In this document: positions 10,338 through 63,641 of the stretch, in pieces | Layout: each line of letters opens with the position of its first letter | Numbering within the stretch: position 1 is the stretch's first letter | Source of the DNA: Haliotis rufescens | Lineage: Eukaryota | Reading direction: 5' to 3' | Length of the DNA: 64,000 nt | Assembly (NCBI RefSeq): GCF_023055435.1 | Contig: NW_025963846.1 | Span: forward strand, 22,320,001 to 22,384,000 | Translations under genes and position numbers: made by a program | The notes under the pieces: generated by a model | What the model was told of the DNA's origin: nothing | Database searches by the model: none | Seen by the model: only the letters and a program-made list of their open reading frames with translations

Positions 10338-11783
10338 TTATTTCTTCCCATTAGCTTCTTTCGTTCTACTGCTCTTCTTCTCAACATCCTTCGGTTTGCC
10401 CCTCTTCTCAACCTCTTTCAACTTTCTCTTCTTCTCATCAACCTCCTTCAACTTGCTCTTCTTCTCCTCAAGCTCCTGCAACTTCTTCCGAGCTTCATGA
10501 TGAGACTCCTCTAGCTTTTCCATCAGGCTGTCTGTCCATGCCAGGAACTTCTTGATGCTATCCACTTTCTGCGCATCGTACTTCATCATCAAAAAGTCTG
10601 GAGGCTTATCGATAAATGATGCAGCTTGCTTGGTGTTTTTGGATGAACTAGCTGACTCAGTTCTCTTGTCTTGAGCTCTTCCATCACTAGATTTTGACTT
10701 TGGTTTTGACTTTTCGTCAGTCTTGATTGAAGAGGTGGTCTTCTTACTAGACTCTTTCTCTCTTGATGTTCCAGCAACACTTTTTGACCTAGAAGGTTGT
10801 TTCTGGTCAGAATCTAGAACAGGTTTTCGGGCAAGTTGAATTTCAATCTTTGCTTCACGCTCAACATTACCTGGGTCCAAGAAATCGGGATTATGTCTTT
10901 CTCTGATGAAAGTCCTAGTTAAAGCATCATCCAGAATGGGGTCATAATCCTTCACTTTGTGTTCAGTGATCATGTGGTATCGAATCTCGGGCTGATCCTT
11001 ACATCCAATGCTACAGTATGGGCAGCAAAAATAATTTTCCATCAATACATGTTTTTCTTGCCAGTGACGATGGAAAGCCGATTTCGGACCCTGGAAATAA
11101 CAAGCCATCACTTTGCACATGAATTTGGCAGATGGGGTTCTGAATTCCTCCTCATCTTCATCAGAACTAATCCTCTCAGCACCAGCAACTGTATGTCCAC
11201 TCATACCACCATGAGTACGAATTCCATGGCCTATTCTGAAATGTTCAATCAGCTTAATCTTCCGGACAAAATGGATTGAGCACACAGGGCATGACAGGAC
11301 ATTGGTCGACTCGAGATGCTTCGAATTCCAATGTTGCAAGAAAGAAGCCGATGAGGCAGCAAATGAACATTCTTTTTCTGGACACTTGTACACCTTGAAG
11401 GGATTGTAACTTTCTGGTGCAGTGGGATCACTCTTTCCAAAAATCTCCACCATAGCTTCTTTTTCATCACAACAAGGGTCTACATAATAAGGATTGTGTC
11501 TCGACTCCACCTTGACATTCCCAAGGATATTATCCATGGTTCCTCCTTCATCGGTGACACCATGGCCATATATCAAGTGGGTTCTCATCCCCCTGCGGTC
11601 TGCACATCCTGTGTCACACACCGCGCAGATGAGGAAGTTGCAAAAACTCAAATGGATTTCCTTCCAGTGGCGACGGAATTGCTGCTGTGTTCCCTGGAAG
11701 CCACAGCGATCCACACTACAGAGGAACATTGGCCCAGGGTCCTCCTCCTCAGAGCTGATGTCATCATAAAGGGTCGATAATTT
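10338..11783 (-). CDS. Terminal zinc-finger exon of the downstream gene
   Basis: ttacag|KLSTLYDD...; three C-x4-C..HW-x3-H plus C-x2-C..H-x4-H units; KFLAWTD helix; Lys/Glu tail; ORF 10338..11849. Confidence 0.85.
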   Translation of the reverse strand, partial: KLSTLYDDISSEEEDPGPMFLCSVDRCGFQGTQQQFRRHWKEIHLSFCNFLICAVCDTGCADRRGMRTHLIYGHGVTDEGGTMDNILGNVKVESRHNPYYVDPCCDEKEAMVEIFGKSDPTAPESYNPFKVYKCPEKECSFAASSASFLQHWNSKHLESTNVLSCPVCSIHFVRKIKLIEHFRIGHGIRTHGGMSGHTVAGAERISSDEDEEEFRTPSAKFMCKVMACYFQGPKSAFHRHWQEKHVLMENYFCCPYCSIGCKDQPEIRYHMITEHKVKDYDPILDDALTRTFIRERHNPDFLDPGNVEREAKIEIQLARKPVLDSDQKQPSRSKSVAGTSREKESSKKTTSSIKTDEKSKPKSKSSDGRAQDKRTESASSSKNTKQAASFIDKPPDFLMMKYDAQKVDSIKKFLAWTDSLMEKLEESHHEARKKLQELEEKKSKLKEVDEKKRKLKEVEKRGKPKDVEKKSSRTKEANGKK

Positions 11784-17700: not shown

Positions 17701-20700
17701 AGTCAATCAAATTACAGTTGTGTTATGAATTTTAGATTTTGACGAAATCTTTTTGTTTATCCTGCCATTCTGAACATCTTAAGCAGGAAATCGCAATTTA
17801 TATTAAAAATATGGTGCTTTGTTGATGTATCATGCTAGGTTACGAGCTGTGACAAAGTTTTTTCATGCATAATTTTGGCATTAAACATCGTGTCCGAGCC
17901 GAGAATTTAGGCGACGAAAGCCGATGTCATTTGATTTACATTACAAGCGATCGCACGAAAAGATGGAAATAATAACTTGGCAGTAAGTTTAACAACTTTT
18001 AGATATATTTTTGTTGATTGTATCTATAACTTTGTATACTATATTCAAAGCTTTGCTTGAAACGTCTTTATTATGCTCTTTGACATGTTCGATGTGGACC
18101 CGTTTTCGAAGTGCGTGTCTGAGATTTTTATTTTAAATAACATTACGGGAAATAGTGAATAATTTCTTAATCTATTGATAAAAAATGATCAATTGAAATT
18201 GAATACGTATTTCAGACATTGTGAAATGTGATAGATTTAGTAAATGAAAGATATGACTGGTAGGTTTAAAAAATTATATACTATTTTGACGTGACTACGG
18301 CTTGGCCGGTAGGGCCTATACCGGCCTACGGTGTCTGGGAATGCTTCTTGGCCGGTATTACGGGCCTACGGTGTTGAATGAGTAATAATGATTAATCATA
18401 AGCAAGTTCAATTTGATTATGAGTTTTCATTGTGTGTCAGTACATATCTGTCAAATGTGGTGGTGGTTGGTGGTTAGTTGTTTAACGCCGCACTCAGCAA
18501 TATTCCAGCTATATGACGGCGGTCTGTAAATAATCGAGTCTGGACCAGACAATCCAGTGATTGACATCATGATTGACCACCCAATTGGGATCGATGACAT
18601 GCATCAACCAAGTCAGCGAGCCTGACCACTCGATCCCGTTAGTCGCCTTTTACGACAAGCAAAGTCACCTTTTACGGCAAGCATGGGTTGCTTAAGAACT
18701 ATTCTACCCCGGATCTTCACGGGTCTCTATCAAATGTGGATTGTTTGAACCATGCTGGGTGTATTTGCCACACAGGAGGCAACGGTTACTCACCTCCGTA
18801 AACTTAACAGGATTAGAAAAAATACGATTTCCCCTGATTCGGAAATGCTTGGTGACAGCATTTGCTGCCTCGCTGGCCTTGTTGAAGGACACAAATCCAT
18901 ACCCCTTCGACCTGATTCAACAGAAGAAAGTGATTGGTGTCAGTCAGCTCTCAGAAAGGTGGTGAGGTGAAGTTGGGTTTAACGCCGCATACAAGATTAT
19001 TGCACTTTTATAGCGATGTGCAGGCACGTGTGGGGGGGGTGGGGGGGCTTGATTGTACTAGTCCGGACTGAGATACCATACCGCAGTTTAACATGAATAC
19101 CCCACTCAGACACAGTATACTGACTCCGAGCCGACCAGTCCTTGTTTTAGCCCCTTAATGCCGAGCGCCAGACAGGGTAAAAACAAGTACCATCGTTTAA
19201 CGTCTTTTGGTATGACGCGACCAGGGATCCAACCCAGGACCTTCTGCTCTCCGGGCAGACACTCTACCACTAGACCATGGAGGCAGTCACTCTCAGAAAG
19301 TATCATGCATTTAATATGAACACTTAATTGACACACTTCTCATGAAGCCATACAAAAAACAACAACATGGCAGCCTTAAATGACATTGTGTGAATGGGGC
19401 ACAAAATGAATTAGGTCTTAGATAAATGAGAGTGCATTGGGCGTAAAGCTGTTTTGAACAGTATTCCAGTTATATCACAGCGTGTCAGCTTGATGTGGGA
19501 GGAAAGCCCGAAGAGATACAGGTTTTGAGATGTTTACCACTTTGGTAAAACCCACTAGCATGGGTGTGGTGCTGACAAACCTAGAAACATTATAAGGGCA
19601 AACAGTATTCGAAGCCACGATCAGAGGTCTCTGGTGTGCGCAAGGGACACAATTCTGCACATTAAAGCACCTTACACGAAATTATCATTCATTTAATATC
19701 AACACTTAACCGACACACTTCCAAATCAAATCATACAAAAGAAAACACTAACTTAACACACTTGGCAGACAGTGTTCAACATGAAGCACGAGAGTCATGG
19801 GGTCCTTGCTATTGCACCAATGTTAAAAGGTTTACAGTCCATTAGGAATTGCATTGGACCCGGACATTTCTCAAAGTACATGTTAAAGTATATTTTTTTG
19901 CTTTTGTTCTTGTCTGTATCTTCATTTCTCAAAAAACCTACTATGGTTTAGTACACTTAAAATTCTTATTTTATCATTTAGACAATGTCGGACATCTTGA
20001 ATTCAATATGTCCACCATAATAGAGGCTGAGGCAAATGGCGTTTAGCTTTCATGACGTCAGTTTGACCCTGGGTCCTCAGAATGAATACCATTGGAGCAA
20101 ACCTCAAGGACCCCAGGACCCATGGACCCTCCTTAGTTTAAAAAAGTACGGGCAGCGCACATTTGAGCTGAATGTTTGTTGAACACCACACTCAAGCTTT
20201 ATTCAAGCTGTATGATGGTGGTCTGTAAATGATGGAGTCTGGATCCAACAATCCAGCGATTCTTAGCATAATGAGTGAGTTTGGTTTAAAACTGCTTTGG
20301 ACAGTTTTTCAGTTCAATCACTGCATCTCATCTCAATGTGGGGGGAATGCACCCAGTGATGCAGGTGGTAGATTGTTTGGTTGGTTGGTTTGTTGTTTAA
20401 CGCCGCACTCAGCAATATTCCAGCTATATGACGGGGGTCTGTAAATAATCGAGTCTGGACCAGACAATACAGTGATTAATATCATGAGTATCGATCCACG
20501 CAATTGGGATCGATGACATGCATCAACCAAGTCAGCGAGCCTGACCACCCGATCCATGCCTTAAGACATCCACAGATTTACCTTTTACTCCCTCGCTTGA
20601 CAACGATGTTGGCAAACATAACCTTTCCACATTCTGAGAAGGTGTTGTACAGATCTTCAGCTGACGTGTCCATAGCTAAGTTAGACACATGGATCCTCTT

Positions 20701-23700
20701 CTTACATTCATCTGGGGTCTTCCTTGGATTGGCAGCCTAAAGTTAACATATTATATGAATATTAGAGTAAATGTATTCAGAAAATTTTAAAGACTACAAC
20801 ATAACTGATTCACATATTCTGAATACATTTGCCCAAATATTAATATACAGACATAAATTAGAATATCAAAATATTTTCTCTATGTAATACTTAGCCTTCT
20901 TTACATTATGCTTTTTGTTGCTTTCTGGTCGAAGTATCTATGGAATGAAGACTTACGAAGATTGTATTCTTGATATAAATAAAGTTCTTAAACAAGAAGT
21001 ATCCCAATGACTGCTCCCTGGAGTTACCTGGAGTTACCTCCCATGCCCCTCTGTGATCAGAGTTTCTTGAGCCCACCTGAAATACTGGTTGCTGGGATCT
21101 ATATTCTCACCCATTTACTCATACTTACCCCTGGAGGATAAGACGTGGTATCATCCGTGGTTTCTTCTAAAGTCTTCACTGAAAGAAATGAACAGAAGTA
21201 TAGTATATTATCTGATATTTGGTTTCTATGAACATGCAACATACGAGAGCCAGATCCACTTTGCCTTTTATGATAAGATACCACACATTCAATACAGGTA
21301 AACAAATGAATTTGGGACGGACAAACAAGTGGTTGATGTTATGAACACAGTCTGGGTACTTGACACACATTCAACGAGGTCAACACGGTCACCGAGGCTG
21401 ACTGCACAATCCAAGCAGTTGCTTCTTACAAAAACATAGAATCAAGTCAGAATCCACAGGCCAGAGCGAGTGAGTATGTTTTTACGCCACTTTTTGCAAT
21501 ATACTAGCAATATCACGACGGGGGACACGAGAAATGGGCTTCACACATTGTACTCCACTATTTCCCTCCTCCCTCGGCTTACATTCCCCGTCAAGACCGA
21601 GGGGGAAGTTTATATCCATAACGTAATAACCTCTTGTGAGGTTTTACTTTTTCCAGGTAGGACCTCATCCTGGATGTGAGGTTTTACTTTTTCCAGGTAG
21701 GACCTCATCCTGGATGTGAGGTTTTACTTTTTCCAGGTAGGACCTCATCCCGGATGTGAGGTTTTACTTTTTCCAGGTAGGACCTCATCCTGGATGTGAG
21801 GTTTTACTTTTTCCAGGTAGGACCTCATCCCGGATGTGAGGTGTTACTTTTCTCCTGGTAAGACCTGGTATGAGGGGTTACTTTTTGCAAGTAAGACCTG
21901 ATAATTTGAGGAGCAGATGGAATTTGGACTTAGTGTTTCAAATGTCCACTGTTCTAAAATCAAAGACAAGAAATAAAACTTTTTCATTGTGGATGGCGGG
22001 AATCGAACCTGCAACCTCACATATTGTGTTAAGTTTTGTAACCCACTGTTTTTCAACTGAGCCACCGGTGCATGATGCTAGAATGTTCAATTTTAGATGT
22101 CATGACTTAGTTTTGTCTATGCTGCACGTTTCTTCTCTCGCACGCTTTGATTGCATTCCCTTTATACCGCGACACACACTGTAAGATATCTCCTGTAAGA
22201 TGTTTCCTTATTTTTTTTCTGTTATTTAGGCGGTACATAAGTGAGATAACACACTCCTCCTCGGTCTCACACTGCCGATACCCTCTTGCCTCGTTCCTAC
22301 TTCCTCAACCATAACCTTGGAGTCGTGATTTATCCTTCACAAACGAACCTCAATTATACATTGACAGGGAAGGATTATTGTTGACAAAAGCGGAATGCCT
22401 ACAATCTACTACAGTGTGTTGATATAGGAGATATCGAAAGACTGGTGAGATAATCTGTGTACCGTATTTGACATAATAAGCACCCAGGGTGCTCTTAAAA
22501 TTAGAAATAGGGGGCTCTTATTAGAATAAATTTTTGGTGAAAAAAATGCCTGTTGAAATATCGTTAATTTTGTGGTTTATGCTGACAGCCTGAAATGATA
22601 CAAAAGAAAAGTCTGTGCGTATTATAACGATAGATATATTTTTTCAGTATTTACTTGCCCATAATTAAGGGTGCATATAACACATAAGTGCGTATTATAT
22701 ACAAATAAATAAGTCTTGTGTACATTGATCAATCGGAAGTGGTGCTAATTGGGACTGTTCACTAGCCGTGGGCGCTTATTAGAGCAGGGGGCTTATTAAG
22801 TCAAATACGGTATTATGGCTTCTAATTAATCAAATCTGTACCAGCAAGCCTGGCCAGTGAATCCCATTGGTAACCTCATACATTAAGCTTGAGTTGCTGA
22901 AGACTAATTCTAACCTGAATCTTCAAGGGTGGAATAAGAATAGCAACTTACCTCTAAATTTTTTACATTTGTAACACTTGAGCCGAGAAATAAAGTTGTT
23001 TAATCCACACTGAAAATATACAATGAATTAAACAATGAATACAAAATCTATAATCTGATTGATTATTTCAGTTAACTCAAAACATTTCCTGTCTCATGTT
23101 AAAACCATAAAATCAGTTCGGCTTAAACTAAAATGGAGCTTTGAACATGTTGAATGGTATTTTCAAAGATATCAAAGCATAGCAGCTAAATATATCAGGG
23201 AAGCAAAAAGTGATGCAGGTCTTTGATGAAACCCAGGAGACACGATATTGGTCCGACAAACCAACTATCACAATCAGTGCAAATCTGTCGTTCAGACAAA
23301 GTCACAGGATCCTTGCACACATAAGGGACACAACTCTGCAAAGACTCCTTAAACCAATGGGCAATCTGTGCCTTCTGACATGATTCCAGCTATATAACAG
23401 CGGTCTGTAAATAATTCGAGTCTGGACCAGACAATCCAGTGATTAATATCATGAGCATCGATCCACGCAATTGAGATCGATGACATGCATCAACCAAGTC
23501 AGCGAGCCTGACCACCCAATCCCGTTAGTCGCCTTTTACAACAAGCATAGTCGCCTTTTACGGCAAGCATGGGTTGCTGAAGACCTATTCTACCCCGGAA
23601 TCTTCACGGGTCCCTTCTGACATGAGTGAGTGAGTGAGTGAGTGAGTATGGTTTTACGCCGCTTTTAGCAATATTCCAGCAATATCACGGCGGGGCACAC

Positions 23701-26700
23701 CAGAAATGGGCTTCACACATTGTACCCATGTCGGGAATCGAACCCGGGTCTTCGGCGTGACGAGCCAACGCTTTAACCACTAGGCTACCCGACCGCCCCC
23801 CTTCTGACATGAGGAAAAACTTGACTCTGCACTAAAATTATGATTAAATTACAACATACCCCAAAATCATGAATAAATTTTGACATACCCCAACACATTT
23901 CCATGTCTTATCACCACCTTTGTCGTCTGAGCGATGGTCTTGACCATGATCTTTGTGAAGTAGAGATAACCCTTCTCCAGCATCTACTGCTCCAACGTAT
24001 CTGTCTGAACTACCAAACCGACCTCTCCTGGATTGGGAACCGCCCCTATCATCGCTTCTATGTCTGTATGAGGAGCTGTAGGGGCTTGAATCCTTCCTAA
24101 CATTTCGGTCTAATGATCCTCTTCTTCGAGAAGATCGGCTGTCATCTTTCAAACTTCTGTCAGTTGACAGTCTTTCATCCCTGTTGCTGCTGATCGGAGA
24201 ATATCCGTCACGTGGGTAGCTTCTATCAGGCGAGTGTCTGTCATCCCAAAAGACTCTATCTGGTGAGAGACTTAAATCATCTCTAAAACGTCTGTTTGGG
24301 GAATCTCTTCGTTCAAGAGAATGCCTGTCATCTCTAAAATGTCTATTAGGAGACTGCTGTCTTAAATCTCTATCTAGTCTTGAATCTCTATCTAGTCTTG
24401 AATCTCTATCTTGTCTTGAATCTCTATCTAGTCTTGAATCTCTATCTAGTCTTGAATCTCTATCTTGTCTTGAATCTCTATCTAGTCTTGAATCTCTATC
24501 TAGTCTTGAATCTCTATCTTGTCTTGAATCTCTATCTAGTCTTGAATCTCTATCTTGTCTTGAATCTCTATCTTGTCTTGAATCTCTATCTTGTCTTGAA
24601 TCTCTATCTAGTCTTGAATCTCTATCTAGTCTTGAATCTCTATCTCGTGATCGTCGTTCATCCCTGAAGCTCCGATTGGGTGATTGTCTCAGTTCTCTTC
24701 TACCAGGTGAATTTCTTTCACTTCTAAAATTTCTACCAGAAAAATGGCCCATATTTCGTTTCTCAGGCCTGTCATCTCTATCATCGTATTGACTTCTGTC
24801 TGGAGAGTGCATGTATGAATCTCTCGGATTGTTACTCATTGTCAAATCATCTTCTCTATGAAAAGAAGAATGTAGATCAGGTGACCTCCTAGATGACAAT
24901 CTCCCCTCTAAGGACCTCGATGGGGATCTTCTTTCCGGAGACCGCAGTGACCTCCTAAGCCTATACTCCTCTTCTGAGGTGGAAGTGGGACCATGTCTTG
25001 CTGCATCTCTTGGCGTGTTCTTGGTCGGATGCTTATTCCCCTGATGCGAGGAGCCAAACACTTCTGCTGCATGTTTCATAAGCGCATCATCGTGTCCATC
25101 GTCTTCCCTACTCCTGTCTGCTTTTCCCCTGTCTTTTCTTCCCCTGTCTCCTCTTCCCCTGTCTTTCCTTCCCCGGTCTTCTTTCCCCCTCTCTTCTTTT
25201 CCTCTGTCTTCTCTTTTACTCTTCTGGTCTTGTTTCAGGATGGATTTTATCACACCACCACTCCCATCGATTGGAGGTGCCCCACCAAGAAACCTGAAGA
25301 AACCATATTTTTAAGAATATCCCATGAGGGCAACTTGACAGAATTATTCAGTGACTGCAAACCGGATAAATATAAAACAGATACAATGTCATTAAAACCA
25401 GATCTGATACTCCAGTACAACNNNNNNNNNNNNNNNNNNNNNNNNNNNNNNNNNNNNNNNNNNNNNNNNNNNNNNNNNNNNNNNNNNNNNNNNNNNNNNN
25501 NNNNNNNNNNNNNNNNNNNNNNNNNNNNNNNNNNNNNNNNNNNNNNNNNNNNNNNNNNNNNNNNNNNNNNNNNNNNNNNNNNACCTTTAGCAACATTCCA
25601 GCATATCACATTGGTCTTCACACATTGTACCCATGTGGTGAATGAAACCCGGCGTGACGAGCCAACGCTGTAACCACTAGGCTACCCTACCGCCCCTGGT
25701 CATGCAGGTTAGCCCTAGGCAAATTTAGGCCACCAAATCTAAGTGAAATATGTAAGTGTGCGATGGGGAAGCCTAGTGGATAAAGCGTTTGCTCGTCACA
25801 GCGAAAGGCCTGGGTTCGATACCCCACATTGGTACAATGGACAATTTAGGAACTGGCCATTTATTATAGTGAGTGAGTGAGTATGGTTTTACGCCGCTTT
25901 TAGCAATATTCCAACAATGTCACAGCGGGGGACACCAGAAATGGGCTTCACACATTGTATCCATGTTGGGAATGAAACCCGTGACGAGTGAACGTTTTAA
26001 CCAGTAGGCTNNNNNNNNNNNNNNNNNNNNNNNNNNNNNNNNNNNNNNNNNNNNNNNNNNNNNNNNNNNNNNNNNNNNNNNNNNNNNNNNNNNNNNNNNN
26101 NNNNNNNNNNNNNNNNNNNNNNNNNNNNNNNNNNNNNNNNNNNNNNNNNNNNNNNNNNCAAATGATGAAAACACGCTGATGTGTTTGGGGGAGAGGGGTC
26201 ACCAAAAAATGTTACATATATATAGGGGGGGTCATCAAAATATGACACAATCCCAAGACCAATCTCCACCCCCTACCTTCTCCATAATCAATTACCAGTC
26301 CCAAACAATTCTTCAGCCATCAAACATCATCTTTTCACAAAAGTTCCCCTTTATTTGTTTATCACCTCGATTCGCAAATTTCGATTTGTACACTACAAAA
26401 CCTTAACAGAACACAAAGATACTTGGATGGTACTTGTTCCTATTGGTGAGTAGTCAGATCTTCACGCAGAGGTGTTGTATCAGAGTTTAAGACCTGAAAC
26501 TAGTTTTGTTTGTCATATTACTCCACACTCGGCAATATTCCAGCCACATGTCATCTTCCCTAGGCAAGGGAGTTAACTGACTAACTCACCTCGAGAAGTG
26601 CATCAAATCACGCGAGCATCTTCTTTAAAAACATGAAAAGATTTGCAAAATATCTGCTGATGCCCAGTTGATGGTAAACGTCCTTTGCAAATCAACCCAA

Positions 26701-29700
26701 ATCTGCACATTGAAATCGAAGAATATTTCGTTATGCTATTTTGATTGGACTTGTTAGTCCAGCCAAAATATAACTCCATAATTTCAGTCTAATTTCGGCT
26801 AGGTTGGAAACTGGACTTTTAGAGTCATTTAACTCTCTTGCCTTGGGAAGATGCAGTGTTCGCGTTAACGCAGAAACCTGCATTTTTCACGCATTAAAAT
26901 CATATAAACACGCAAAAATATTTTGCATGCGTCTTTTGCACGCACAGATTGTGTTATACTTAATTCTGTATTAATACCATAAAAACAAAAAACTATTCAA
27001 AGCTGATAGCCTGCTTACAATGTTCAGACGAAAATAAATCAAAACCTGGAAATTCCCATTGCTAAAAATAGAATGTGACCAGATGGCGCTTTGAATCGCG
27101 TGCTTTATATTTCAAAAAATTTTCTTTGGGCAACAGAATAACTAATCTCAGACACAGGACGTCATTCGTTACTATCGATGGAATTCCCCAGAAGTCGTTC
27201 GTTTCATCCAATCAGAGCCCAGCTTACAAGTAATAGTCGGTAATACGAACGATCATAAACAGAGCGACGGAAGAAAACTTCCACACATGGGCATGTGCTA
27301 ACAACAGTCATATTTATTCTATTAATGATAGAGCGTTCATTATATCAAAACTGGACCGTAAGTTAAAGCTTGGTCATAATTATTAGCTGTACTAGTACTG
27401 ATTTTATTGAAATAAAAACTTCACACGTGAAATATTTGAATTGAAAATTTATTATTTCATTTCTGCACGCACTGTACAAAAACCTACCGCGAACACTGAA
27501 GATGGCTACACGTATATGACAGCTGTCTGTAAATAATCGAGTCTGCACCAGACAATCCATCCAGGACATGCATTTGCCAAGTCACAGAGCCTAACCTCCC
27601 GATCCAGTTAGATCCTCTTATGACAAGCATAAGATGCTGAACACCAATTCTAACCCGAGACTTCACGAGGCTCGTGCTAAGAAATGGATGGCAGGAACCA
27701 ATGGACTAGTGATTTTTGGATAGCAGCACAAAAGACTAACATACACGCCATGATAAGCTTACGTGAAGCTTTGGTCCAGATGAGCAAAAATGATAACGCT
27801 TAGTTTTACAACACCATGTCTGATTTTGTTTTCATACCTGTCTGGTACGTTTCTTGCCCTTCCAAATGCAGCTTGCCCAACATCTTCACTGTAGCACATC
27901 TTTTTACTAGGCTCTCCATCTCCTTCGTCTCGCATACTGCGTGGACTATACCGGTTTTCTTCTCTCTCAACAATCTCCTCGTCAGAATCTCTTGCTTTGT
28001 GATGGTAATCAAATACCGCCATCTGTTGGGCTGGCAGGTTCTCAAGATCACCCCCTCTCTCTGAGATATAAAGAAAATAATGTACCATGATGTACAGCAT
28101 GCTCTAAATCTTTTCTTTGGAAAATTCATAATACCAGTGATCAGGAGTGGGGGTGGGGGGTGGGGGAAAAGAAAGGGATTGGTCAAAGGACTTAGGACAA
28201 CAATAACAATAACAATAACAACAACAACAACAACAACATCAACAACAGGCAAATTATATTGCGCATATTGCTGCACCACACAGGGGATTGCTCAAAACGC
28301 TATTATTACACCGGTCACTGGATCAGTGTGCTCTCAACAATCATTCTCAGCTCCCTGGGGAGTATACAACCCAAGCTGACTGTTAGGTGCTAGAAGCTTA
28401 ACAACCACATTGCAATCACATCCTACCGGGTACCCATTCACTGCTGGATGAACACAGGCACAAGGAGACACCACATGTGGAACATGTGCTTAAGTGTGGG
28501 GCAGGACCGAAGCCCTAATAACTCTTGAGGAGCCAAGCTGCCGAACACGGTCCCCATCCAAGGACTCACCGCGTACGCCGTTGCTTAACTTCACCTGCTT
28601 TGTGACCTGTGAGCTGTGCATAGGACCACGTGCCGCCACGTATCATTTTGTTTCTGCCACCTCCTACCCCTCATACATGTACATGAACACTTGTCAATGA
28701 CACGCACGGACAATGGTTCCAGTTCCTAAATAATGTTTCAAATTTCTAACTTTATTGTTTGTGCCACCTCCCCTGCACACCCAAGGTGTGAAAATGTTTG
28801 CTGTGTTTTCCCTCCTCATCACACCGACAAGCCCTCCCTAATAATAATAAATTACCAGTCCCTGAGGTGGTCTTGATATACTCCAGGTTTTCTGTTATAT
28901 TGACAGACTTAAATATAGTGCGCTGCAGACTGTGCCAAAAACATTTGAGTTTATTTGATTATAATTGTATCTTGGCAGTATTTGCAGTAGACTTAGTTCT
29001 TTGCATGTGGACTTGCATCAGCTGATCTTGTTTGTTTGTTTGTTTGTTTGCTGTTTAAAGCAATATTCCAGCTACATGATGGTGGTCTGGACCGGACACT
29101 CCAGTGACTGACATCATGAGCATCGATCCACGCAGATGGGATACGATGACATGCATCAACTAAGTCAGCAAACCTGACCACCCGATCCCGTTAGTCGCCT
29201 CTCACGACAAGCATTGTCGCCTTCTACGGCAAGCATGGGTTGCTGAAGACCTATTCTACCCCGGATCTTCACTGGGTACACTGTTACATATCTGTCTTAG
29301 CCTGGTCTGTTCTGAGTATTTACTTCCATGTTATCAATCACACTGGGTATGTGTAGGTTTCTTTGGATAGTCAAAATGTTCGAGTCTGTTGGGTATTTAT
29401 GAACCAATGATACCCATTTAATATAATTTTGCTTAAAATGCTGTCTTCAATTTGTGTAGTATTCACTGCAGCAGAATTCATGTATGTGTGATGCCTGCTT
29501 CTTATCGTATTACAGTATTTAAATAAACAACAAGTGGGAGTTGTTTATCGTACAATAAAACACTGCAGATACTTTTACACCAGACTGTAACTCTCCACGA
29601 AAGAGAAAGAGTAAGCTAGGGTGAGTGAGTGAGTGAGTTGGGTTTAACGCGCTTTTAACAGTATTCCAGTTATATCACAGCGTGTCAGCTTAATGTGGGA

Positions 29701-49900: not shown

Positions 49901-52900
49901 TGACTGCTGGCCCATTGGCCTGTGGCCAGTTAAAATTACAAAGGGCTTGCTGAAATGTAAAGTAAATGGCCCGTCTGGCTAGTCAAAATTTCATCCCTAC
50001 TCGTGTATGTTTAATGTTATTAATTGGATCGTCTCAGTAGGATGACAACTGGCTGACATTTTGTAATGTTGTGTACAACGACTACTTCATCTGCTTATAT
50101 AGTGCCATGAAATGAGGCAAATGGAAGCCAAAAGTTAATCTTAGAGTGCAGAGAAAAACGTTTTAGGCATGAGGAATTCTAAAATTTTCAAAGCCCTGCT
50201 AGCTGGCTACGTGACCTCAGGTACGGCCATTTCGTGGCCTCTACCATGTAGTTGTAGGCCAGTTTGGAGAAGGGCCAGTAACATTTGAAAGGAGCAAGCC
50301 CTGCTGGCTACACACAAATTTGTTGTTAAATCTACCCCTGCACATAGGTTGAGCGAGTTAAAATTTAACGTCCCATCGCCAATATTTTAACTATAAAGCA
50401 ATCCTGCACATAGGAACTGTGCCACATGTGAGGTGAGGTGAAATTGGGTTTAACGTCGCATCCAAGATTATTGCATTTATATAGCGACGTGCATGCACGT
50501 GTATGTGTGTGTGTGGCTGCTTGTACTAGTCCGGACTGATGCCGATTTATAGTGCTAGCTCACTGAGATACCATGCCGCAGTTTAACATGAATACCCCAC
50601 TCAGACACAGTATACTGACTCCGAGCCGACCAGTCCTTGTTTTAGCCCCTTAATGCCGAGCGCCAGACAGGGTAACAACAAGTACAATCTTTTAACGTCT
50701 TTTTGTATGACGCGGCCCGGGATCGAACCCTGGACCTTCCGCTCTCCGGGCGGACGCTCTACCACAAGACCACGGAGGCGGTCTGTGCCACATGTACCAA
50801 ACATGCATATGTCCCTATTACTGCTTCACATACCTTCACTGGCTGAGGACACACTGTATTTCCAGGATCTACATAGGCCTTGTTCTCCCTAGTCTCAGAT
50901 TTCGACAGTTTCAGCAGCAGATCATGTTGCTCCCCCTTGATCCCGTGGACTTTACAGATGTGTGCTGTGAAAGCATGTTTGGAAGGGTAGGCCTTTTTGG
51001 ATCGCTGAAACTGACACTTGGGGTGAGGACAGCTGTATGTAGTGATGGTGGGCTTGTGGACGCTTGACCAATGGTCCCTCAGTTCTACCCATACAAGTTC
51101 AACACTGCAGCTGCTTACTGGGCAGGGTACCTGCAAGAAACAAAGCTGTTCATTGTACTTCCTCATCAAATATTAAACACCGATCAAGGCCTCAAAGTTT
51201 AATTTTTTTTACAAAGAAGCCGTATGGCTACAAATATTTTTTTCCAGGTAGCCAGTGGTAAAATCAAGAAGTCAAGCCAATATTGTAGGTAGCCAAAGGC
51301 ATTTGAAATTATCTTTTATCAAATAACTATTATAACATGCATAACACTAAGTCATAACACCAGTCTATCCAATGAGCTAAAATACTAATCAACGTACATT
51401 AATATATATGTATATCTGTTCATTGTCGACTATAGGAGGTATTATACGCGAGTACAATTATCAGCAGATATTTTTTCCACAATCAGCTGTTATTTATTTT
51501 TGTGTCTTCAAATGCAAAGCAATAGAATTTAGTCGCCACAAGATATTTTTCATAGTAGTCATTTGGCTACCTCTGAATTTTAGACAGTAGACATATTGAA
51601 ATTTAGGTCGAATTGGCGAACGTTTTAGTCTCAACTTTGAGGCCTGTGATCTTTGATGATGCTAATACTTCCTTGTCTGTTACGAGGTACCACAAAAGCA
51701 ATAGGGCAAATGGAATAGAATAACATCTGTCTTTAATAGAGTTGTAAAAGATTTAACCATCACCGAAAATAAACAAATTCTCATAGGAATCTGAATAATT
51801 TCATTACACTCTCTTGAGCTAATAAAATATTTCAGTTCTATCTACTTCTAGTTCCAATGGCTTTGTTATGAAACATCAAGACGCAAGTCATTGTACATAC
51901 CTGCCATGTTCTTTCTTCAATCATTATCTTCCACACTTCCGCTTCTGAACCCGCGCATAAAAGTCACAAAATGACATCGTATTTCGTCTGTTTCTGACAG
52001 AATACCTCATCCCATCGAAACAAAGTAGTAAAAGACTGACACTTTCAACAATTCTACTGGTAGGGTACACTAGGGGTTTTATATCTGCAAGTTCCAGTTT
52101 TGACCTGGAAACATCTTTATAAACAAAGGTTCAACGTCTAAAGCTTCTAAGTATGTACAATGACAAGCTTAGTAAAATCTGAATACTTTTTACATTTGGA
52201 TACTTTTTCTACATTACTACCTTAATGCTAGTACTGCTGTTTTTTTACTTCGGAGACGGAGCTGTAAGAGGTGCTGGCTACAGAAGTTGTTGTACCCACT
52301 AGTTGTGTGGCTTCCTTCCTCCCGGGGATATGCTGGACAATGAACCTCATGTGTAGTCGATCCACTAATTGGAAGTGAGTGAGTGAGTGAGTATGGTTTT
52401 ACGCCGCTTTTAGCAATATTCCAGCAATATCACGGCAGGGGAAACCAGAAATGGGCTTCACAAATTGTACCAATGTCAGGAATCGAACCCGGGTCTTCGG
52501 CGTGACGAGCTAACGCTTTAACCACTAGGCTACCCGACCGCCCCACTACTAGAAGTACTGGAAGATCTGAGATAGCAGGGATGATGAGTGAGGAGTTCAC
52601 AGGTTGCACAGACACCAGGCAACTGGGATGTGTCTGTGGAAATGGCAAGTATTTGGTGCTGATGCCGGGACTACCAATGAGACAGTGATGAGTTCTAATT
52701 CTAGATTGTTTATGTGCCATCAGAGTCGAATGTTTGACCACAGCCTGGAGGCAGTCCTTCAGATGAGCCCACCAGCCGTCATGATGCGTCAACCAACAGG
52801 TGGAGGGAAGGCTTGAGCACTGTCAAGGAGACATCATCACAGAAATCTTACTGTCCACCAATGAATAAACAGGGCCAGAAACATCTGTAGTGGACGTAGT

Positions 52901-55900: not shown

Positions 55901-58900
55901 GCTGGGGAAATCCCATGTTCAGTGTGTGTAACTTGTAGGTCGACCGGCATGAAGTGTGCAAGACCCAGATTGTTGGGAGGTGACCATGGTGACGCTAGAT
56001 GTGTTTGGGTGGATTGTTTTTGTCAGAGGCTGGAAAACTTTGTTTAGGCATGTTTCCATTAAGAATCAAAAGAAGAATGAGAAATGCATATTGTGAGTTA
56101 GGAAAAGTACAAAATATAGTTTGTACTTGCTTATCGATATCAATGCGAGATTAATATGGGGTTAAATGCGAATTGATGCCTAATTTAGTGTATCAGGTAT
56201 CGTATCACGCAAAGTTTGCTAACGATGCACCGGTGTACCATCGCAACATCAATGATAAAAGTTGTGCTTCACAGGCGTATGATTAATGTTTGTGATGATG
56301 GTGATGAATACCTGTGAATTGGCATCATAGTAGAGCCCTGTTGATGGATCATAGTAGTATCCTGAGGACTTATCGAACTGGTAAGTTGATACATCGGGAG
56401 CTGCTGCAATAGAATGTAGCTTTCAGGAAATATTGGTAAATTATGGATGTACAAGAAATTCTTCACCCTTGTCAATCCATGACATCAACAGTTCAACTTA
56501 CTTCCGATTACCATAGCAAATAATTTTTTCAGATAAAAACTGAAAACAAATCATGTTAACCTTATTTTTCAAACAGGAAATCACTTCAGCTATCAATCAC
56601 AATAAAATAGATAATTATGAGATACACTTCTGTGAGCAATGCGAGGAATACTTACGATATGCAAGTACTTCTTTGTTCCCAGCAGGCTGGGCAGCGGCCT
56701 GTTCAACTACTGGCTCGGCCTTCTTAGCACCTGGTGTCTGGAAGAAATTCACCAAGAACAATTTTTATGTTCTAGAAATACCATATAAAAGTTCATTATG
56801 TATTATGTAAACATGGAAGGGGCGTTTATCAAATTAATCTTGATCAGTTGATGGCCTTATTCTACCATGAAGATGTTTGATTCAAAGAAAGACTTTGTTT
56901 AGATCTTGTATAAGCAACCTACATGCCGATGCATAGCTGCCAACTTTCCCAAATTACAATGAGTATTTTGTCTTATCTTCTGGTTGGGACACCAAAGTCT
57001 GACGAAATGAATCATCTGCTGGACAATAAAGCCATGTGATTCCGAAACTCAGAAGATAACTTTATTTCCTAGTTTCTATTTCAACTACAGCAACTTCCAA
57101 TAATACGATTGGAGTGACTCCATTGGACAGATGCAATACAATAGACTTCATACCAGTCGAGAAACACAACGAAATCGTATGTGTATGGCTAACTGGCGAC
57201 CCTCTTTTCACAATGCCTTTTTTAGTCCTTGTCATTTTTTTTCATAGAATGGCCAGCATAAGAAATTGGCATGAGTCCTGTAGTCCTTGTCAAACTGCCC
57301 AATAGTTAAGGTATCATAAGGACACCATTTTGCCATTTTAAAGGGTTTTGCTATATGTTATCATTATAGTCATTAGGACTAGTGGTCTAAAAATGTTTGT
57401 TTGAATGAAGGAAATAATCCTTCCTTGTTTGACAAGTACCTGCTTGTTGTAGTTCTTGGCAGCATTGGCTTGGGCAATAGCAGCCTGAGCAACAGCAGCT
57501 GCAGCATTGGTAGAATCCGCTGGAAATGTACAATCACATTATATGCAATTATTCACATGCAAAACCAAAAGGACATTACAAAGAAGAAGTAGATAAGTCT
57601 TGATCATATCAACATATGGAGAACACAGAAACTTATGCTATCTTCTGACTTACTTCAAATGTCGGGCATACAAATCAATTGTAAAGATTTGTGTATTGGT
57701 GAATATTGCCTCATGAACATTTGCCTGAGAAGTTAAAGCAGGTCTGTAGTTCCTTTTCACAAACAGTGATGAATGGATGGTCATGCTACAACTGCTGTAC
57801 CCAGACCTGTTTACTCCTAACTTGCCATACCAGTAGTTCACTAAGAACAGAGCTCCAGATAAGCTGCGTATCTGCGTAAAATATGAATAAAAAATGCAGA
57901 AATATGCAGTAAAATAAAATCCAAGTGTATCAAATACGCAACGAACATTACAGATTTGTTACAAAAATAAAACTTGTCCGTATCATCAAAATATTGTGAA
58001 GTAACCCAGCTTATTCGATTAGCAAATCAGCAACTTATTTTGAAATTATAAACAGACATTCCGTCAACCTTGCCAAACTCCACGATGACAGTTACATCAT
58101 GATTATTTGCCATCACACTTTCTTGTGGAAGTATCGTGGTATTTTTGAGTCCTATAAAGCTCTCGAACCCACACGACACCAGTTTGCAGGGACTAGATGA
58201 ATAGTGTTCTTAAATATTTAACTTAAATACCTACATGTGTAAAAACTAGTGGGTAACAGAAATTTGAATACCAAGATAGAATTAATGATACACAATGATT
58301 TTAAAATACCCACAACACCAAAAGCTTATCTGGAGCTCTGTAAGAATCTGTCTGTAGTTCTATTTGTCAGTAGTCATTGTTATCAGTGTGAGAGCAGGTG
58401 AAGTCGAACTCATCAAGGGACATCGTCCAAACAAATGTGTTGTTTTCTTACCAATTTTGAATGGAGGTAGGGGGAATTCTTCTTCAAAAAGATTCCAGAA
58501 ACTATCATAAAAAAGTTGACGTGCATACTTACTAGTAGCCGTGACATATCACAACGAGTGCTGTAATCGTGCGATGAATATCGTACTTAGATTTGGGTGT
58601 GTGGATTACGAGATTTACTGATACTGCAATAACACAGTCATACTATAATTCATCAGTTAAGAACTTAATTTATATGATATTCTTAAAATCTGTCAATTTC
58701 TCACCAGGACTTGAAGTCAGTGTACTTAATGAAAAATCTGTAGGAACTATGAGAAACTGTAGGAGTAAACAGGTCTGTGTATCTCTCATAATGGTCTAAC
58801 AGAAGAATGCTCGCTCTATGCAAAGGGACCCTGGAGCAGGCAAACGAGTGACTGAACCAACAGAAGAGAGCTCAGTATCATTCCACCTCCAACATACCAA

Positions 58901-61900: not shown

Positions 61901-63641
61901 TATACTCACACTGTGGAGAAAGTGTTCTTTGCATAGGATGTGAGAACTTGTTTGCCATCTACTTCCAATGGAACGTTGTTCCGTGTAAGGAAGTCTATAA
62001 CTTGAGTGGATTCCTGAATGGAATTCATCTCACAGAACCCATACCCCCTGGATGTGTTTGTGACTGGGTCTCGAATGATCCGCACATTCTTAGACTGGAG
62101 AGTTGTTTGCAATCGTAATGCTACATCGAGGGACTCTTCTGTTGTAAGTGCATCAAGACCTCGAAATATAAGAGCTGTGGAAAAATATGGTCGTGATTAT
62201 TATAAAAAGAGTCAAATGAAATACTAACACTAATATTACGATATTGGACAAATACTACTTAATGTCAACGAACACACTACACAATCTTATTCTTGGTGAA
62301 AGGCTAAAATACCCCATAAACAAAAAATATTTTTTTCAGAATTGTTCTGGGTACTCCGCTTCTGACCAATGGTAGTCCTTCAGCATTATAAAATTCTATC
62401 ATCCTTGCATTTACAATATGATATATAGACACACATTTGAATCTGTCTTGTCTATACTGGGAACTTAATTTGTCCAGGTTTGAGAGCTATGAGTCTGAGT
62501 TATGTCCCTTGGTATCTCCTAAAAGGCATAAGTGAGTGAGTGCGTTAAAATTTAAAGTCACATAGGCAGTATTTCAGCCGTTTCGTGACTATAAAATATT
62601 ACACATAATAAATACAATTAGAGTATTAAAAATCATCAGAGGACAGTAAAATAACTACATTCATCACAGATCTATATTTAAAACTAGTATGTTACCATAA
62701 AAAGATACCGTTGTACACTACAAGACTTTATAACAAGAGTAATCAGAAGATTACAAATCCCCCCGGCCCCCACAAATTCCAAAGAACAAGTCATCTGACT
62801 GTTACTTGTAAGTCCAACTTGATGAGAGAATTTCTATCTGATCTGTCTGTCAGTATACAAGAGCAGTTATTGAGCTATCAAAACAACACCATGGAACTGG
62901 GATTAGGGACTTCGTATTTCTATGTCAGGTACACACCACTATGAACAAACTTCAAAGTCAAACTTGTTGCCATGGAAACGGAAAAAAATAAATTCTAAAC
63001 ACCCATAAGTAGCAAATGGCACCATTTGGCAACCTGCTCTTTGAGAGTGCACAAGAAAGAATACATATTAGTTTAGAGATATGGTCAGGACAAATATGCC
63101 ACTATGAACAGTCAGCGTCAATTTTTAACCCTGTCACATCTCTGCAACTTTAACACAGTGTGACATTGAATTGTTGTTTCCAATATCTGAAACACCCCTA
63201 CATTTTTGAGAGCACAATTCCATCCTTGGACCTAACATAGGTATAGTCGTAAAGTAACAGTTATGTACTATGTTCATGATGTCATTATGTTTGACTTTCA
63301 GTGAGATGCATTTTGTAAATGTTAACAAAACTTACTATTGCATGGATTAGTTCCTACTTGGTCAAAGCCATCTCCATCTTTTGTTTTGTCAGATTCTGAA
63401 AAAAAGATAGGTAAACAAATATACATACGGGTGAATTTAATTCAGATATTTGCATGCATTTGTAAACAATGACTTCTCCATTGCTTTCTAACTGTTAAAT
63501 TATATGTGCAAATAGATTTTTTGGTCTTTATGTTCTAAAAATGCTGAAAACATTTAAAGAAAGATTCGAAAACACCTTACCATCTCTGGAAATATTGCAC
63601 TTGAAACAGTAATCTCTTCTCTTGAAATTATGAACACCACA
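40965..63641 (-). CDS. RBM5: RNA-binding protein 5/10 homologue (splicing regulator), 5'-partial, 16 coding exons in window (~640 aa)
   Basis: Exons (minus): 63641-63581, 63395-63336, 62174-61910, 61104-61071, 59197-58948, 57519-57440, 56737-56656, 56403-56312, 45312-45148, 44330-44172, 43964-43926, 43634-43392, 42899-42846, 41977-41892, 41691-41565, 41090-40965. All GT-AG, phases chain, total 1923 nt ending in TAA. The domain order RanBP2-RRM-OCRE-C2H2-G-patch and the C-terminus [18 protein letters not shown] are diagnostic of RBM5/RBM10; RBM5 and RBM10 cannot be separated in an invertebrate. Confidence 0.93.
41565..41691 (-). CDS. RBM5: RBM5/10 exon: G-patch domain
   Basis: [30 protein letters not shown], a canonical G-patch. 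Confidence 0.93.
43392..43634 (-). CDS. RBM5: RBM5/10 exon: C2H2 zinc finger
   Basis: [33 protein letters not shown] matches the RBM5/10 C2H2 finger. Confidence 0.92.
45148..45312 (-). CDS. RBM5: RBM5/10 exon: OCRE domain C-half and Lys-rich segment
   Basis: ttgcag|[24 protein letters not shown]...[10 protein letters not shown]|gtaagc, phase 0->0. Confidence 0.92.
46977..51924 (-). CDS. Nested, same-strand uncharacterised zinc-finger protein (3 paired-C2H2 modules, Pro/Thr/Gln repeat, C-terminal FLxWTD helix), ~846 aa
   Basis: Exons 51924-51901 (MIEERTWQ|gtatgt), 51130-50834 (ttgcag|VPCPVSSC...CPQPVK|gtatgt), 49196-46977 (ttgcag|VQAPETQ...ELEKKE*). All phase 0, 2541 nt with no stops. The first micro-exon is less certain than exons 2-3. 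Confidence 0.8.
48625..48985 (-). repeat. Coding 24/12-bp tandem repeat (PATQQPTR / PATQ)
   Basis: gagttgctggtcgagttggttgtt repeated within the nested gene. Confidence 0.9.
49472..49747 (-). mobile_element. tRNA-derived SINE family D (~275 bp, possibly V-domain type), representative copy
   Basis: Head ggggcacgggtggcccagttgtctaagg...ggttcgaatcc with long box A-B spacing; TSD ggtgaacattg. Other copies near 6860, 13140, 19435, 29620, 34480, 37960 (all -). Confidence 0.82.
49889..50340. mobile_element. MITE with imperfect 16-bp TIR and 6-bp TSD
   Basis: cacata|ctggggtcgatttgac...gttaaatctacccctg|cacata. Confidence 0.65.
50430..50783 (-). mobile_element. tRNA-derived SINE family C (~350 bp, MetaSINE-like central domain), representative copy
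   Basis: Box A/B head; central gtcatac-aaaagacgttaaaa...ggcgctcggcattaagggg domain (Meta assignment from recall); TSD tgtgccacatgt. Other copies near 3627, 18960, 30475, 40325, 61370 (all -). Confidence 0.82.
51188..51646. mobile_element. MITE-like element in intron 1 of the nested gene
   Basis: aggcctcaaagtt ... aactttgaggcct inverted termini. Confidence 0.55.
51925..51960 (-). promoter_or_regulatory. Possible promoter/5' UTR of the nested gene with an ETS-type motif
   Basis: GCGGAAGTG (minus strand) about 10-20 nt upstream of the candidate ATG at 51924; motif evidence only. Confidence 0.3.
52222..54818 (-). mobile_element. Decayed DIRS-type (tyrosine-recombinase class) retrotransposon with inverted terminal repeats
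   Basis: RT remnants [13 protein letters not shown] / [24 protein letters not shown]; RNase H remnants ([13 protein letters not shown]); 52222-52293 is the near-perfect reverse complement of 54743-54818; frameshifts and SINE insertions present. Confidence 0.8.
53363..53532 (-). mobile_element. SINE family A inserted in the DIRS RT
   Basis: TSD gatgggcacatga splits the HVPI motif. Confidence 0.9.
55118..55350. repeat. ~31-bp tandem repeat interrupted by a MITE-end fragment
   Basis: gacaaatatctcaatacagaagccatgatt; 55190-55247 matches the terminus of the 59530-60137 element. Confidence 0.75.
56312..56403 (-). CDS. RBM5: RBM5/10 exon: OCRE domain N-half
   Basis: [31 protein letters not shown]|gtattc, phase-0 donor; NAGNAG acceptor. 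Confidence 0.92.
57848..58340. mobile_element. MITE with 18-bp TIR and 6-bp TSD
   Basis: taagaa|cagagctccagataagct...agcttatctggagctctg|taagaa; related copy at about 7298-7636. Confidence 0.8.
59530..60137. mobile_element. MITE with ~85-bp TIRs and a 9-bp TSD (Mutator-like)
   Basis: caatctcattaaaatcagaccttag...ctaagatctgatttgaatgagattg; flanks taccttgcc / caccttgcc. Confidence 0.8.
60253..60750 (+). mobile_element. Helentron/HINE-like element carrying ~132-bp internal tandem units
   Basis: About 2.8 tandem units (tacaccatagt.ccaaatatgaag...gtgacctt) and a terminal GC hairpin atcccccgc...gcgggggat. Confidence 0.6.
61910..62174 (-). CDS. RBM5: RBM5/10 exon: RRM (second RRM of the family)
   Basis: [15 protein letters not shown]...[20 protein letters not shown]; RNP2/RNP1 motifs; cag acceptor, gtgagt donor. 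Confidence 0.92.
63581..63641 (-). CDS. RBM5: RBM5/10 exon: second half of RanBP2-type zinc finger
   Basis: ttccag|[20 protein letters not shown]|gtaagg, 61 nt, phase 0->1. Confidence 0.9.

What the first reader, a model, noticed from the sequence alone, without database searches (positions are those of the whole stretch)
10338..63641. Candidate system: RBM5/10, an in-frame nested zinc-finger cassette, and an adjacent gene that hard-wires the chimera
Seen in sequence: the RBM5/10 OCRE exon ends in phase 0 (56312), and both coding acceptors of the nested gene (51130, 49196) are phase 0. One alternative splice would give RanBP2-RRM-half OCRE-[3 paired C2H2]-FLxWTD and drop the OCRE C-half, C2H2 and G-patch. 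The next gene downstream (30454->10338, same strand) already has nearly that architecture: RD repeats-RanBP2-RRM-[3 paired C2H2]-FLxWTD. Established: OCRE and G-patch link RBM5/10 to Sm proteins and the helicase DHX15. Inference: a lineage-specific family swapped those spliceosome contacts for a new zinc-finger/helical module, and the downstream gene arose by tandem duplication of the RBM5/10 5' part plus the nested cassette.
Basis: partly seen in the sequence, partly recalled or inferred. Interest (0 to 1): 0.9.

Follow-up and report, generated by a model that had tools for sequence, protein, structure and literature searches.

The report
RBM5 gene with in-frame zinc-finger cassette
In the red abalone, an intron in the middle of the splicing regulator RBM5 holds two in-frame exons for a mollusc-specific zinc-finger module; gene models in two other abalones join RBM5-type exons to this module at exactly the predicted splice point, but no RNA data could be checked for this species.

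Summary

**What is there**
- The window is Haliotis rufescens. Gene A is its 'RNA-binding protein 5-like' gene.
- A phase-0 intron splits the OCRE domain. It holds two same-strand phase-0 exons encoding three paired C2H2 units and an FLSWTD helix.
- The downstream gene B can be assembled, with all phases consistent, as RD repeats, RanBP2 finger, RRM, three paired C2H2 units and an FLAWTD helix. Both assembly gaps fall in one of its introns.

**New evidence**
- RefSeq models in H. rubra ('proteoglycan 4-like' X1-X3) and H. asinina join the OCRE N-half directly to the cassette at the homologous boundary.
- In those species the RBM5-type exons are a diverged second copy, so the chimera is a separate gene there.
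- H. rufescens has only one copy of these exons genome-wide, so its cassette most likely borrows RBM5's own exons.

- Gene B is not a copy of RBM5's 5' part plus the nested cassette.
- It belongs to an abalone family with the layout split RanBP2 finger, one to seven RRMs, paired C2H2 units, FLxW helix. At least four further loci of it lie about 4.5 Mb away.
- Its RRM is generic, and its zinc-finger units group with those paralogues.

**Limits**
The scan's earlier notes on this stretch come from this same window, not from other DNA.

The parts
63581..63641 (-). Gene A (RBM5-like): second half of the RanBP2 finger. The exon is 61 nt, starts in phase 0 and ends in phase 1. The first half of the finger and the 5' exons lie beyond the window, in L003.
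   Evidence: Sequence read. P0040 (XP_046336205.2) matches the exons at about 100%. The finger's first half ends ...WTCSK| in L003.
61909..62172 (-). Gene A: RRM2 exon. Boundaries are approximate, taken from tblastn.
   Evidence: The best solved relatives are RBM5 (E 2.3e-14, residues 227-315) and RBM10 RRM2. P0040 residues 338-425 match at 100%.
56312..56403 (-). Gene A: OCRE N-half exon. The donor after 56312 is phase 0.
50834..51130 (-). Nested exon 1: one paired C2H2 unit, 297 nt, phase 0 at both ends, no Met.
   Evidence: It is 75-78% identical to the corresponding part of P0041 and P0038.
46977..49196 (-). Nested exon 2: an octapeptide repeat region (24 bp x 15 at 48628-48988), two paired C2H2 units, a low-complexity region, the FLSWTD helix and the stop codon.
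   Evidence: BLASTP against the gene B cassette gives E 7e-12. ATTAAA signals lie at 46511, 46041 and 45848, before the next RBM5 exon.
45148..45312 (-). Gene A: OCRE C-half exon, the canonical partner of the 56312 donor.
43392..43646 (-). Gene A: exon holding the second (C2H2) zinc finger. Boundaries are approximate.
40968..41765 (-). Gene A: the G-patch exon and the last coding exon. Boundaries are approximate.
   Evidence: Pfam G-patch E 5e-17. P0040 residues 853-935 match here.
30169..30454 (-). Gene B exon 1: ATG at 30454, ends in phase 1.
   Evidence: It matches the N-terminus of P0001.
27838..28060 (-). Gene B exon 2: starts in phase 1, ends in phase 2.
25422..26158 (.). Two assembly gaps (25422-25582 and 26011-26158). 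Both are intronic in the gene B model.
   Evidence: The gaps were not filled or looked up.
23889..25293 (-). Gene B exon 3: RD/RS-rich region with an 18 bp x 16 repeat at 24359-24645. It ends ...WKCVG|, the first half of the RanBP2 finger.
22952..23009 (-). Gene B exon 4: second half of the RanBP2 finger. The exon is 58 nt, starts in phase 0 and ends in phase 1.
   Evidence: The split and phases are the same as in gene A and in paralogue P0005.
20582..20711 (-). Gene B exon 5: first half of the RRM. The acceptor at 20711 is inferred from phase.
   Evidence: Pfam RRM_1 E 1.4e-5. Sequence. The phase argument is made in the full report.
18794..18911 (-). Gene B exon 6: second half of the RRM, ending in phase 0.
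10338..11783 (-). Gene B exon 7: three paired C2H2 units, a Lys/Ser-rich linker, the FLAWTD helix and the stop codon.
   Evidence: Pfam zf-Di19 E 9e-9 on unit 2. The orthologue P0001 is 57% identical here.

Best explanation
Nested cassette:
- The window holds the Haliotis rufescens RBM5-like gene. The ancient phase-0 intron in the middle of its OCRE domain carries two extra coding exons on the same strand.
- Most likely these are alternative 3'-terminal exons of RBM5. Splicing 56312 to 51130 (or to 49196) would keep RBM5's RNA-binding front: RRM1, RanBP2 finger, RRM2.
- The same splice would replace the OCRE C-half, the second zinc finger with the SF3B1-binding region, and the DHX15-activating G-patch. 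In their place come three Di19-like double zinc fingers and an FLxW helix.
- Such a protein would still find RBM5-type RNA targets but could not engage U2/SF3B1 or DHX15. This functional step is inferred.

Other abalones:
- In the H. rubra / H. asinina lineage the same chimera sits on a partly duplicated, diverged set of RBM5 exons, so it has become a gene of its own there.

Gene B:
- The neighbouring gene B is not a copy of this arrangement.
- It belongs to an abalone family built as split RanBP2 finger, one to seven RRMs, paired C2H2 units and FLxW helix.
- The nested cassette is the one family-type module that lacks its own RanBP2 finger and RRM. It would obtain them from its host gene.
For: Shown:
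- Identity of the locus.
- All splice phases.
- Nested exon 1 has a strong acceptor and no Met. Yet it is the best conserved part of the cassette (75-78% identity, against 40-57% for the rest), so it must be translated from upstream coding exons.
- Three H. rubra isoforms and one H. asinina model all enter nested exon 1 from an OCRE N-half exon at the homologous boundary.
- Their RBM5-type part groups inside the Haliotis RBM5 clade, next to H. rubra RBM5 (supports 95/93 and 86/87). The duplication is therefore young and the single-copy state is ancestral.
- H. rufescens has no second copy of these exons.
- In the models retrieved, nearly every family member with an FLxW tail carries RRMs N-terminal to the units.
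- A Patella vulgata isoform, P0086, leaves RBM5 at the same donor for a different tail.

From the literature:
- The G-patch binds and activates DHX15, and the region between the second zinc finger and the G-patch binds SF3B1 (PMC13041897).
Against:
- No H. rufescens or H. cracherodii protein containing the cassette was found in the protein collection, in length ranges covering about 393-1636 aa. The cassette is therefore unannotated there or absent from that collection.
- The supporting models from other species are RefSeq predictions whose RNA support I could not see. The H. asinina model is odd: it skips the second finger half and RRM2.
- An in-frame ATG at 51166, 12 codons upstream of the acceptor, would allow an independent start.
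Confidence: 0.6

Rival explanations
1. The cassette is an independent nested gene with its own promoter inside the RBM5 intron. It would start at the ATG at 51166 or at an unseen small first exon. The chimeras of H. rubra and H. asinina would then have arisen only when a duplicated RBM5 segment landed upstream of it.
For: - An in-frame ATG lies 12 codons upstream of 51130 within the open frame.
- No chimeric H. rufescens protein is in the collection.
- Same-strand nested genes are noted elsewhere in this genome by first readers (unchecked).
Against: - The ATG has a poor context, with T at position -3.
- The acceptor at 51130 has a strong pyrimidine tract and is the very position used in the other species.
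- Every available model translates unit 1 from an OCRE N-half exon.
Confidence: 0.25
2. Gene B arose by tandem duplication of the RBM5 5' part together with the nested cassette.
For: - Gene B is adjacent to RBM5 and on the same strand.
- Both have an RD-rich N-terminus.
- The RanBP2 finger is split at the same place and in the same phases as in RBM5, whereas at least 19 other RanBP2 fingers in this genome are unsplit.
- Such a duplication demonstrably happened in H. rubra and H. asinina.
Against: - Gene B's RRM is not RBM5-like.
- Gene B's cassette is closer to the paralogues at 17.7-17.9 Mb (31-36% identity, E 1e-17 to 1e-22) than to the nested cassette (23%, below the genome search threshold).
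- Paralogue P0005 has the same split finger.
- Gene B has no OCRE remnant.
Confidence: 0.12
3. The nested exons are a decaying, unexpressed relic in H. rufescens.
For: - There is no annotated protein for them.
- Units 2 and 3 are missing from the H. rubra and H. asinina models.
Against: - 838 codons are open.
- All 24 zinc ligands, the HW pairs and the caps are intact.
- The splice sites are intact.
Confidence: 0.05

Closest known systems
Haliotis rubra 'proteoglycan 4-like' isoforms X1-X3 (XP_046577146-8) and an uncharacterized 714-aa Haliotis asinina protein
   Same: They have the same cassette and the same junction from the OCRE N-half into paired C2H2 unit 1. They end in the same FMSWT helix. 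The H. rubra models also carry a RanBP2 finger and RRM2 in front.
   Different: - Their RBM5-type exons are a diverged second copy (87-90% identical to the RBM5 proteins over 255 residues), so they form a separate gene.
- Units 2 and 3 are missing from these models.
- The names are automatic, and no function is known.
Human RBM6-RBM5 transcription-induced chimeras (PMC2174484)
   Same: These are RNA-level joins between an RBM5-family gene and a same-strand neighbour.
   Different: - There the join is read-through between two complete tandem genes.
- Here the extra exons lie inside an RBM5 intron and replace the 3' half of the protein.
- Only the abstract was read for this comparison.
RBM5 lacking the G-patch (experimental deletion, PMC13041897)
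   Same: The predicted chimera also lacks the G-patch, so it could not tether DHX15.
   Different: - The chimera additionally loses the second zinc finger, the SF3B1-binding region and half of the OCRE domain.
- It gains a new zinc-finger and helix module.
Abalone multi-RRM proteins LOC124121356 and LOC124121362 (P0005, P0007) and relatives
   Same: They share gene B's layout: split RanBP2 finger, RRM, paired C2H2 units u1 and u2, FLxW helix.
   Different: - They have five to seven RRMs and no RD repeat exon.
- Their tail reads FLLWSH rather than FLAWTD.
Pfam zf-Di19 (PF05605), a double C2H2 zinc-binding domain
   Same: Gene B unit 2 passes the curated cut-off (35.8 bits against 27.5). It is two C2H2 fingers in one module.
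   Different: - The other units fall below the cut-off.
- The units carry an invariant HW pair and an N-x2-F-x-D-P cap that are not part of Di19.
- The AlphaFold model (pLDDT 83) finds only generic C2H2 arrays in the PDB (E at least 0.08, best Z 5.2).

Membership tests
RBM5/RBM10 family (gene A) | Domain order RRM1, RanBP2 finger, RRM2, OCRE, C2H2 finger, G-patch | tested here: met
   Pfam finds RRM, OCRE (both halves), weak sub-threshold C2H2-type matches over the second-finger exon, and G-patch. RRM1 and the first half of the finger lie in L003. The best solved relative is RBM5. The exons match RefSeq 'RNA-binding protein 5-like' P0040 at about 100%.
Alternative 3'-terminal exons / chimeric isoform of RBM5 (nested cassette) | Reading-frame compatibility of the host donor with the cassette acceptors | tested here: met
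   The donor at 56312 and the acceptors at 51130 and 49196 are all phase 0.
Alternative 3'-terminal exons / chimeric isoform of RBM5 (nested cassette) | Spliced RNA joining host exon and cassette in this species | not testable with these tools
Alternative 3'-terminal exons / chimeric isoform of RBM5 (nested cassette) | The same junction in related species | tested here: met
   P0038, P0039, P0041 and P0042 have it, but on duplicated RBM5-type exons and as predicted models.
Abalone RanBP2-RRM-paired C2H2-FLxW family (gene B) | RanBP2 finger split after W-x-C-x2, with the second exon starting in phase 0 and ending in phase 1 | tested here: met
   Gene B and P0005 both have it. At least 19 other fingers in the genome are unsplit.
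Abalone RanBP2-RRM-paired C2H2-FLxW family (gene B) | RRM(s) followed by paired C2H2 units and an FLxW helix | tested here: met
   Gene B units u1 and u3 group with the family's unit 1 (support 87/91).
   RBM5 RRM1 and RRM2 profiles score 6.0 and 12.9 bits, against 49 bits for generic Pfam RRM_1. No RBM5 or RBM10 chain is among the 60 best PDB matches.
zf-Di19 (PF05605) | Score above Pfam's gathering threshold | tested here: inconclusive
   Met by gene B unit 2 only (35.8 bits against 27.5). The nested units score 14.9 bits or give no hit.

The most novel reading that the evidence does not exclude
- One abalone gene makes two kinds of RNA-binding protein from a shared RNA-recognition front end. 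One is the canonical RBM5 that couples to U2/SF3B1 and DHX15. The other is a chimera whose back end is a mollusc-specific double zinc-finger and helix module.
- This isoform was later turned into a separate gene by partial duplication in the H. rubra / H. asinina lineage.
- The whole RanBP2-RRM-paired C2H2 family, gene B included, descends from an older event of the same kind, with the RBM5-type split finger exon as its trace.
Probability: 0.25. Interest if true: 0.75.

Novelty: new variant of a known kind. Interest (0 to 1): 0.55.

Why it matters
- RBM5 and RBM10 are conserved splicing regulators. Their back half (OCRE, second zinc finger, G-patch) is what connects them to the spliceosome.
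- Here there would be a natural case in which that back half is exchanged for an unrelated module, through an intron that is conserved across animals.
- In sister species the same exchange is fixed as a separate gene. That would be a clear example of an alternative isoform becoming a gene.
- It would also give a way into the function of an uncharacterized mollusc zinc-finger family that is, in nearly all abalone models seen, attached to RRMs.
- It also shows that the cassette is missing from the H. rufescens protein set that was searched.

Tried and rejected
**RNA and contig look-ups**

**Protein searches**
- No H. rufescens protein with the cassette turned up in three searches. These see only 0.55-1.75 times the query length, so a blank is weak evidence.
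- RefSeq isoforms X1-X3 of the H. rufescens RBM5-like gene were not in the collection.
Exons were searched one at a time.

**Structure**
- The fold of one unit gave only generic C2H2 matches. No function can be read from it.

**Ideas tested and dropped**
- A degenerate second OCRE exon just upstream of 51130, suggested by a long tblastn alignment: the extension has about 17% identity and a stop codon, so I rejected it.
- A second copy of the RBM5-type exons elsewhere in the genome: none was found.
- The shared finger split as proof of a gene A to gene B link: rejected, because paralogue P0005 has the same split.
- A transposon origin of the cassette: there is no support beyond one NUMOD-like hit in a bivalve protein.

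**Not used**

Full report
**Identity of the locus**

The window is G000 contig C68:22320001-22384000. That contig is 35,286,876 bp long. This is the same length as the contig that carries Haliotis rufescens XP_046336205.2, 'RNA-binding protein 5-like isoform X6' (P0040). P0040 matches minus-strand exons of the window and of the upstream flank L003 at about 100%. The window is therefore red abalone, and gene A is its RBM5/10 orthologue.

- Pfam finds RRM, both halves of OCRE, weak sub-threshold C2H2-type matches over the second finger, and a G-patch (E 5e-17).
- The RRM2 exon's best solved relatives are human RBM5 and RBM10.
- Exon 1, RRM1 and the first half of the RanBP2 finger lie beyond the window.

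Every coordinate checks out.

- The OCRE N-half exon ends at 56312 after a full codon, followed by gt.
- The canonical partner exon starts at 45312.
- Between them lie a 297-nt exon, 51130-50834, phase 0 at both ends, and a terminal exon from 49196 (phase 0) that is open for 739 codons to the stop at 46979-46977.
- Together these two exons encode three units, each with two C2H2 fingers, an invariant HW pair and an N-x2-[FY]-x-[DN]-P cap. After them come an FLSWTD motif and an amphipathic helix.
- ATTAAA signals follow the stop codon before the next RBM5 exon.

**Gene B and the assembly gaps**

I could assemble a fully phase-consistent model: 30454-30169, 28060-27838, 25293-23889, 23009-22952, 20711-20582, 18911-18794, 11783-10341.

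- One correction is needed. The finger exon ends in phase 1. The RRM exon therefore cannot start at 20736, which would give a stop after nine codons. An acceptor at 20711 (ccccag|AT) restores the frame. An extra small exon is the alternative.
- Both N runs lie in the intron 27837-25294, surrounded by SINE-like sequence. The exons on either side join in frame without them. A hidden exon cannot be excluded.

**How rare the cassette is**

A full HMMER scan of 1.84 billion representative proteins with the gene B cassette found only 28 hits at E up to 1e-3. The named ones come mostly from Haliotis species and from bivalves (Sinanodonta, Mytilus), and the remainder are unnamed contigs.

The best hit, H. 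rubra XP_046577129 (P0001), is the gene B orthologue. It reads ...VKFTE|KLST..., the exact counterpart of the junction 18794->11783. The middle of that model looks poor: it includes a repeat-derived stretch and lacks the RD exon.

**The chimera in other abalones**

Searching with nested exon 2 found one protein, H. asinina P0038, which carries an OCRE hit. Searching with its front part found H. rubra 'proteoglycan 4-like' X1-X3.

- All four models run from an OCRE N-half exon (...YYDA(S/T)SQ) straight into the unit-1 exon ((V/A)SCPV...), then into exon 2, and end in the FMSWT helix.
- The H. rubra models also carry a RanBP2 finger and RRM2.
- The RBM5-type residues in these models differ from the RBM5-like protein of the same species: 229 of 255 identical in H. 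rubra, and 56 of 82 in H. asinina.
- In a tree the two chimeric copies group together (95/93), inside the Haliotis RBM5 clade and next to H. rubra RBM5 (86/87).
- In that lineage, then, part of RBM5 was duplicated and the chimera is a gene of its own.
- In H. rufescens a six-frame search of the whole genome with P0041 hits only this window. The single-copy state is most simply the ancestral one.

**Why I favour splicing from RBM5 in H. rufescens**

- Nested exon 1 contains no Met, yet it is the most conserved part of the cassette.
- It has a strong acceptor at the very position used in the other species.
- The only upstream coding exons in a compatible phase are RBM5's.
- In the models retrieved, nearly every other abalone protein with an FLxW tail has RRMs in front of the units.
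- A Patella vulgata isoform (P0086) leaves RBM5 at the same donor for a different tail. This shows the intron is used this way elsewhere in gastropods.

Against this reading:
- No RNA data could be examined.
- No H. rufescens protein with the cassette is in the collection.
- An in-frame ATG at 51166 would allow an independent start.

**Likely consequence (inferred)**

The chimera would keep RRM1, the RanBP2 finger and RRM2. It would lose half of the OCRE domain, the second zinc finger with the SF3B1-binding region, and the G-patch that tethers and activates DHX15 (PMC13041897). It could therefore bind RBM5-type RNA sites without engaging U2 or DHX15.

What the new module does is unknown. One unit passes Pfam zf-Di19. 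An AlphaFold model of a unit (pLDDT 83) shows two ββα fingers plus a helix and hairpin, and it resembles only generic C2H2 arrays.

**Origin of gene B**

- The gene B RRM, scored through its orthologue P0001, is generic. It gets 49 bits from Pfam RRM_1. Its best PDB relatives are PABP, ELAV and hnRNP A2/B1. It gets 6 and 13 bits against RBM5 RRM1 and RRM2 profiles built from about 100 orthologues.
- At least four paralogous loci lie at C68:17.67-17.97 Mb. Their proteins (P0005, P0007 and others) have a RanBP2 finger, five to seven RRMs, two units and an FLLWSH helix.
- Gene B units u1 and u3 group with unit 1 of these paralogues (87/91). The nested units stay unresolved on long branches.
- The finger of P0005 is split after W-x-C-x2, and its second exon starts in phase 0 and ends in phase 1. 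This is exactly as in gene A and gene B.
- At least 19 other RanBP2 fingers in this genome lie unsplit in one open frame.
It does not link gene B to its neighbour in particular.

**Verdict**

- The chimeric-splice idea gains strong comparative support but has no direct RNA support.
- 'Hard-wiring' is real, but it occurs in other species and at the nested cassette itself.
- Gene B is a family member, not the hard-wired copy.

Noticed in passing
window 63826-63991, with further copies at about 23688-23831, 45503-45694, 52433-52560 and 53420-53515: A SINE-like element of about 170 bp. More than 40 copies at 89-94% identity are spread across many contigs, and it litters the introns of both genes.
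   Followed up: partly
window 13795-15935: A 118/119-bp satellite array, about 18 copies (12.5 of them at 93% identity), inside the last intron of gene B.
   Followed up: no
window 53500-54187 and 52975-53385: A 343-bp block repeated twice at 100% identity, which could be a recent duplication or an assembly artefact. Beside it is a reverse-transcriptase-like ORF fragment. Both lie in the RBM5 OCRE intron.
   Followed up: no
window about 36370-37100: Tc1/mariner-type transposase remnants in the spacer between gene A and gene B.
   Followed up: no
L003 5776-6918 (G000:C68:22389776-22390918): A 67-bp minisatellite of about 17 copies, just upstream of RBM5-like exon 1.
   Followed up: no
G000:C68:17672906-17967839: A cluster of at least four minus-strand paralogues with the layout RanBP2 finger, multiple RRMs, paired C2H2 units, FLLWSH helix. 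It includes LOC124121356 and LOC124121362.
   Followed up: partly
proteins P0086 (Patella vulgata), P0121 (the fish Sinocyclocheilus) and P0056: Other annotated RBM5/10 models leave the canonical sequence exactly after the OCRE N-half (...YYD-x3-Q|). They continue with a new tail, possible intron read-through, or skipping of the OCRE C-half exon.
   Followed up: partly
proteins P0082, P0113, P0115, P0116, P0119, P0123, P0125, P0126, P0131: Spider RBM5/10-like proteins are listed with RRM, RanBP2 and OCRE domains but no G-patch.
   Followed up: no
window 51130-50834: Nested exon 1 is symmetric: 297 nt, phase 0 at both ends, no stop codon. It could also be included as a cassette exon in full-length RBM5, which would insert a zinc-finger unit into the OCRE domain.
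   Followed up: no
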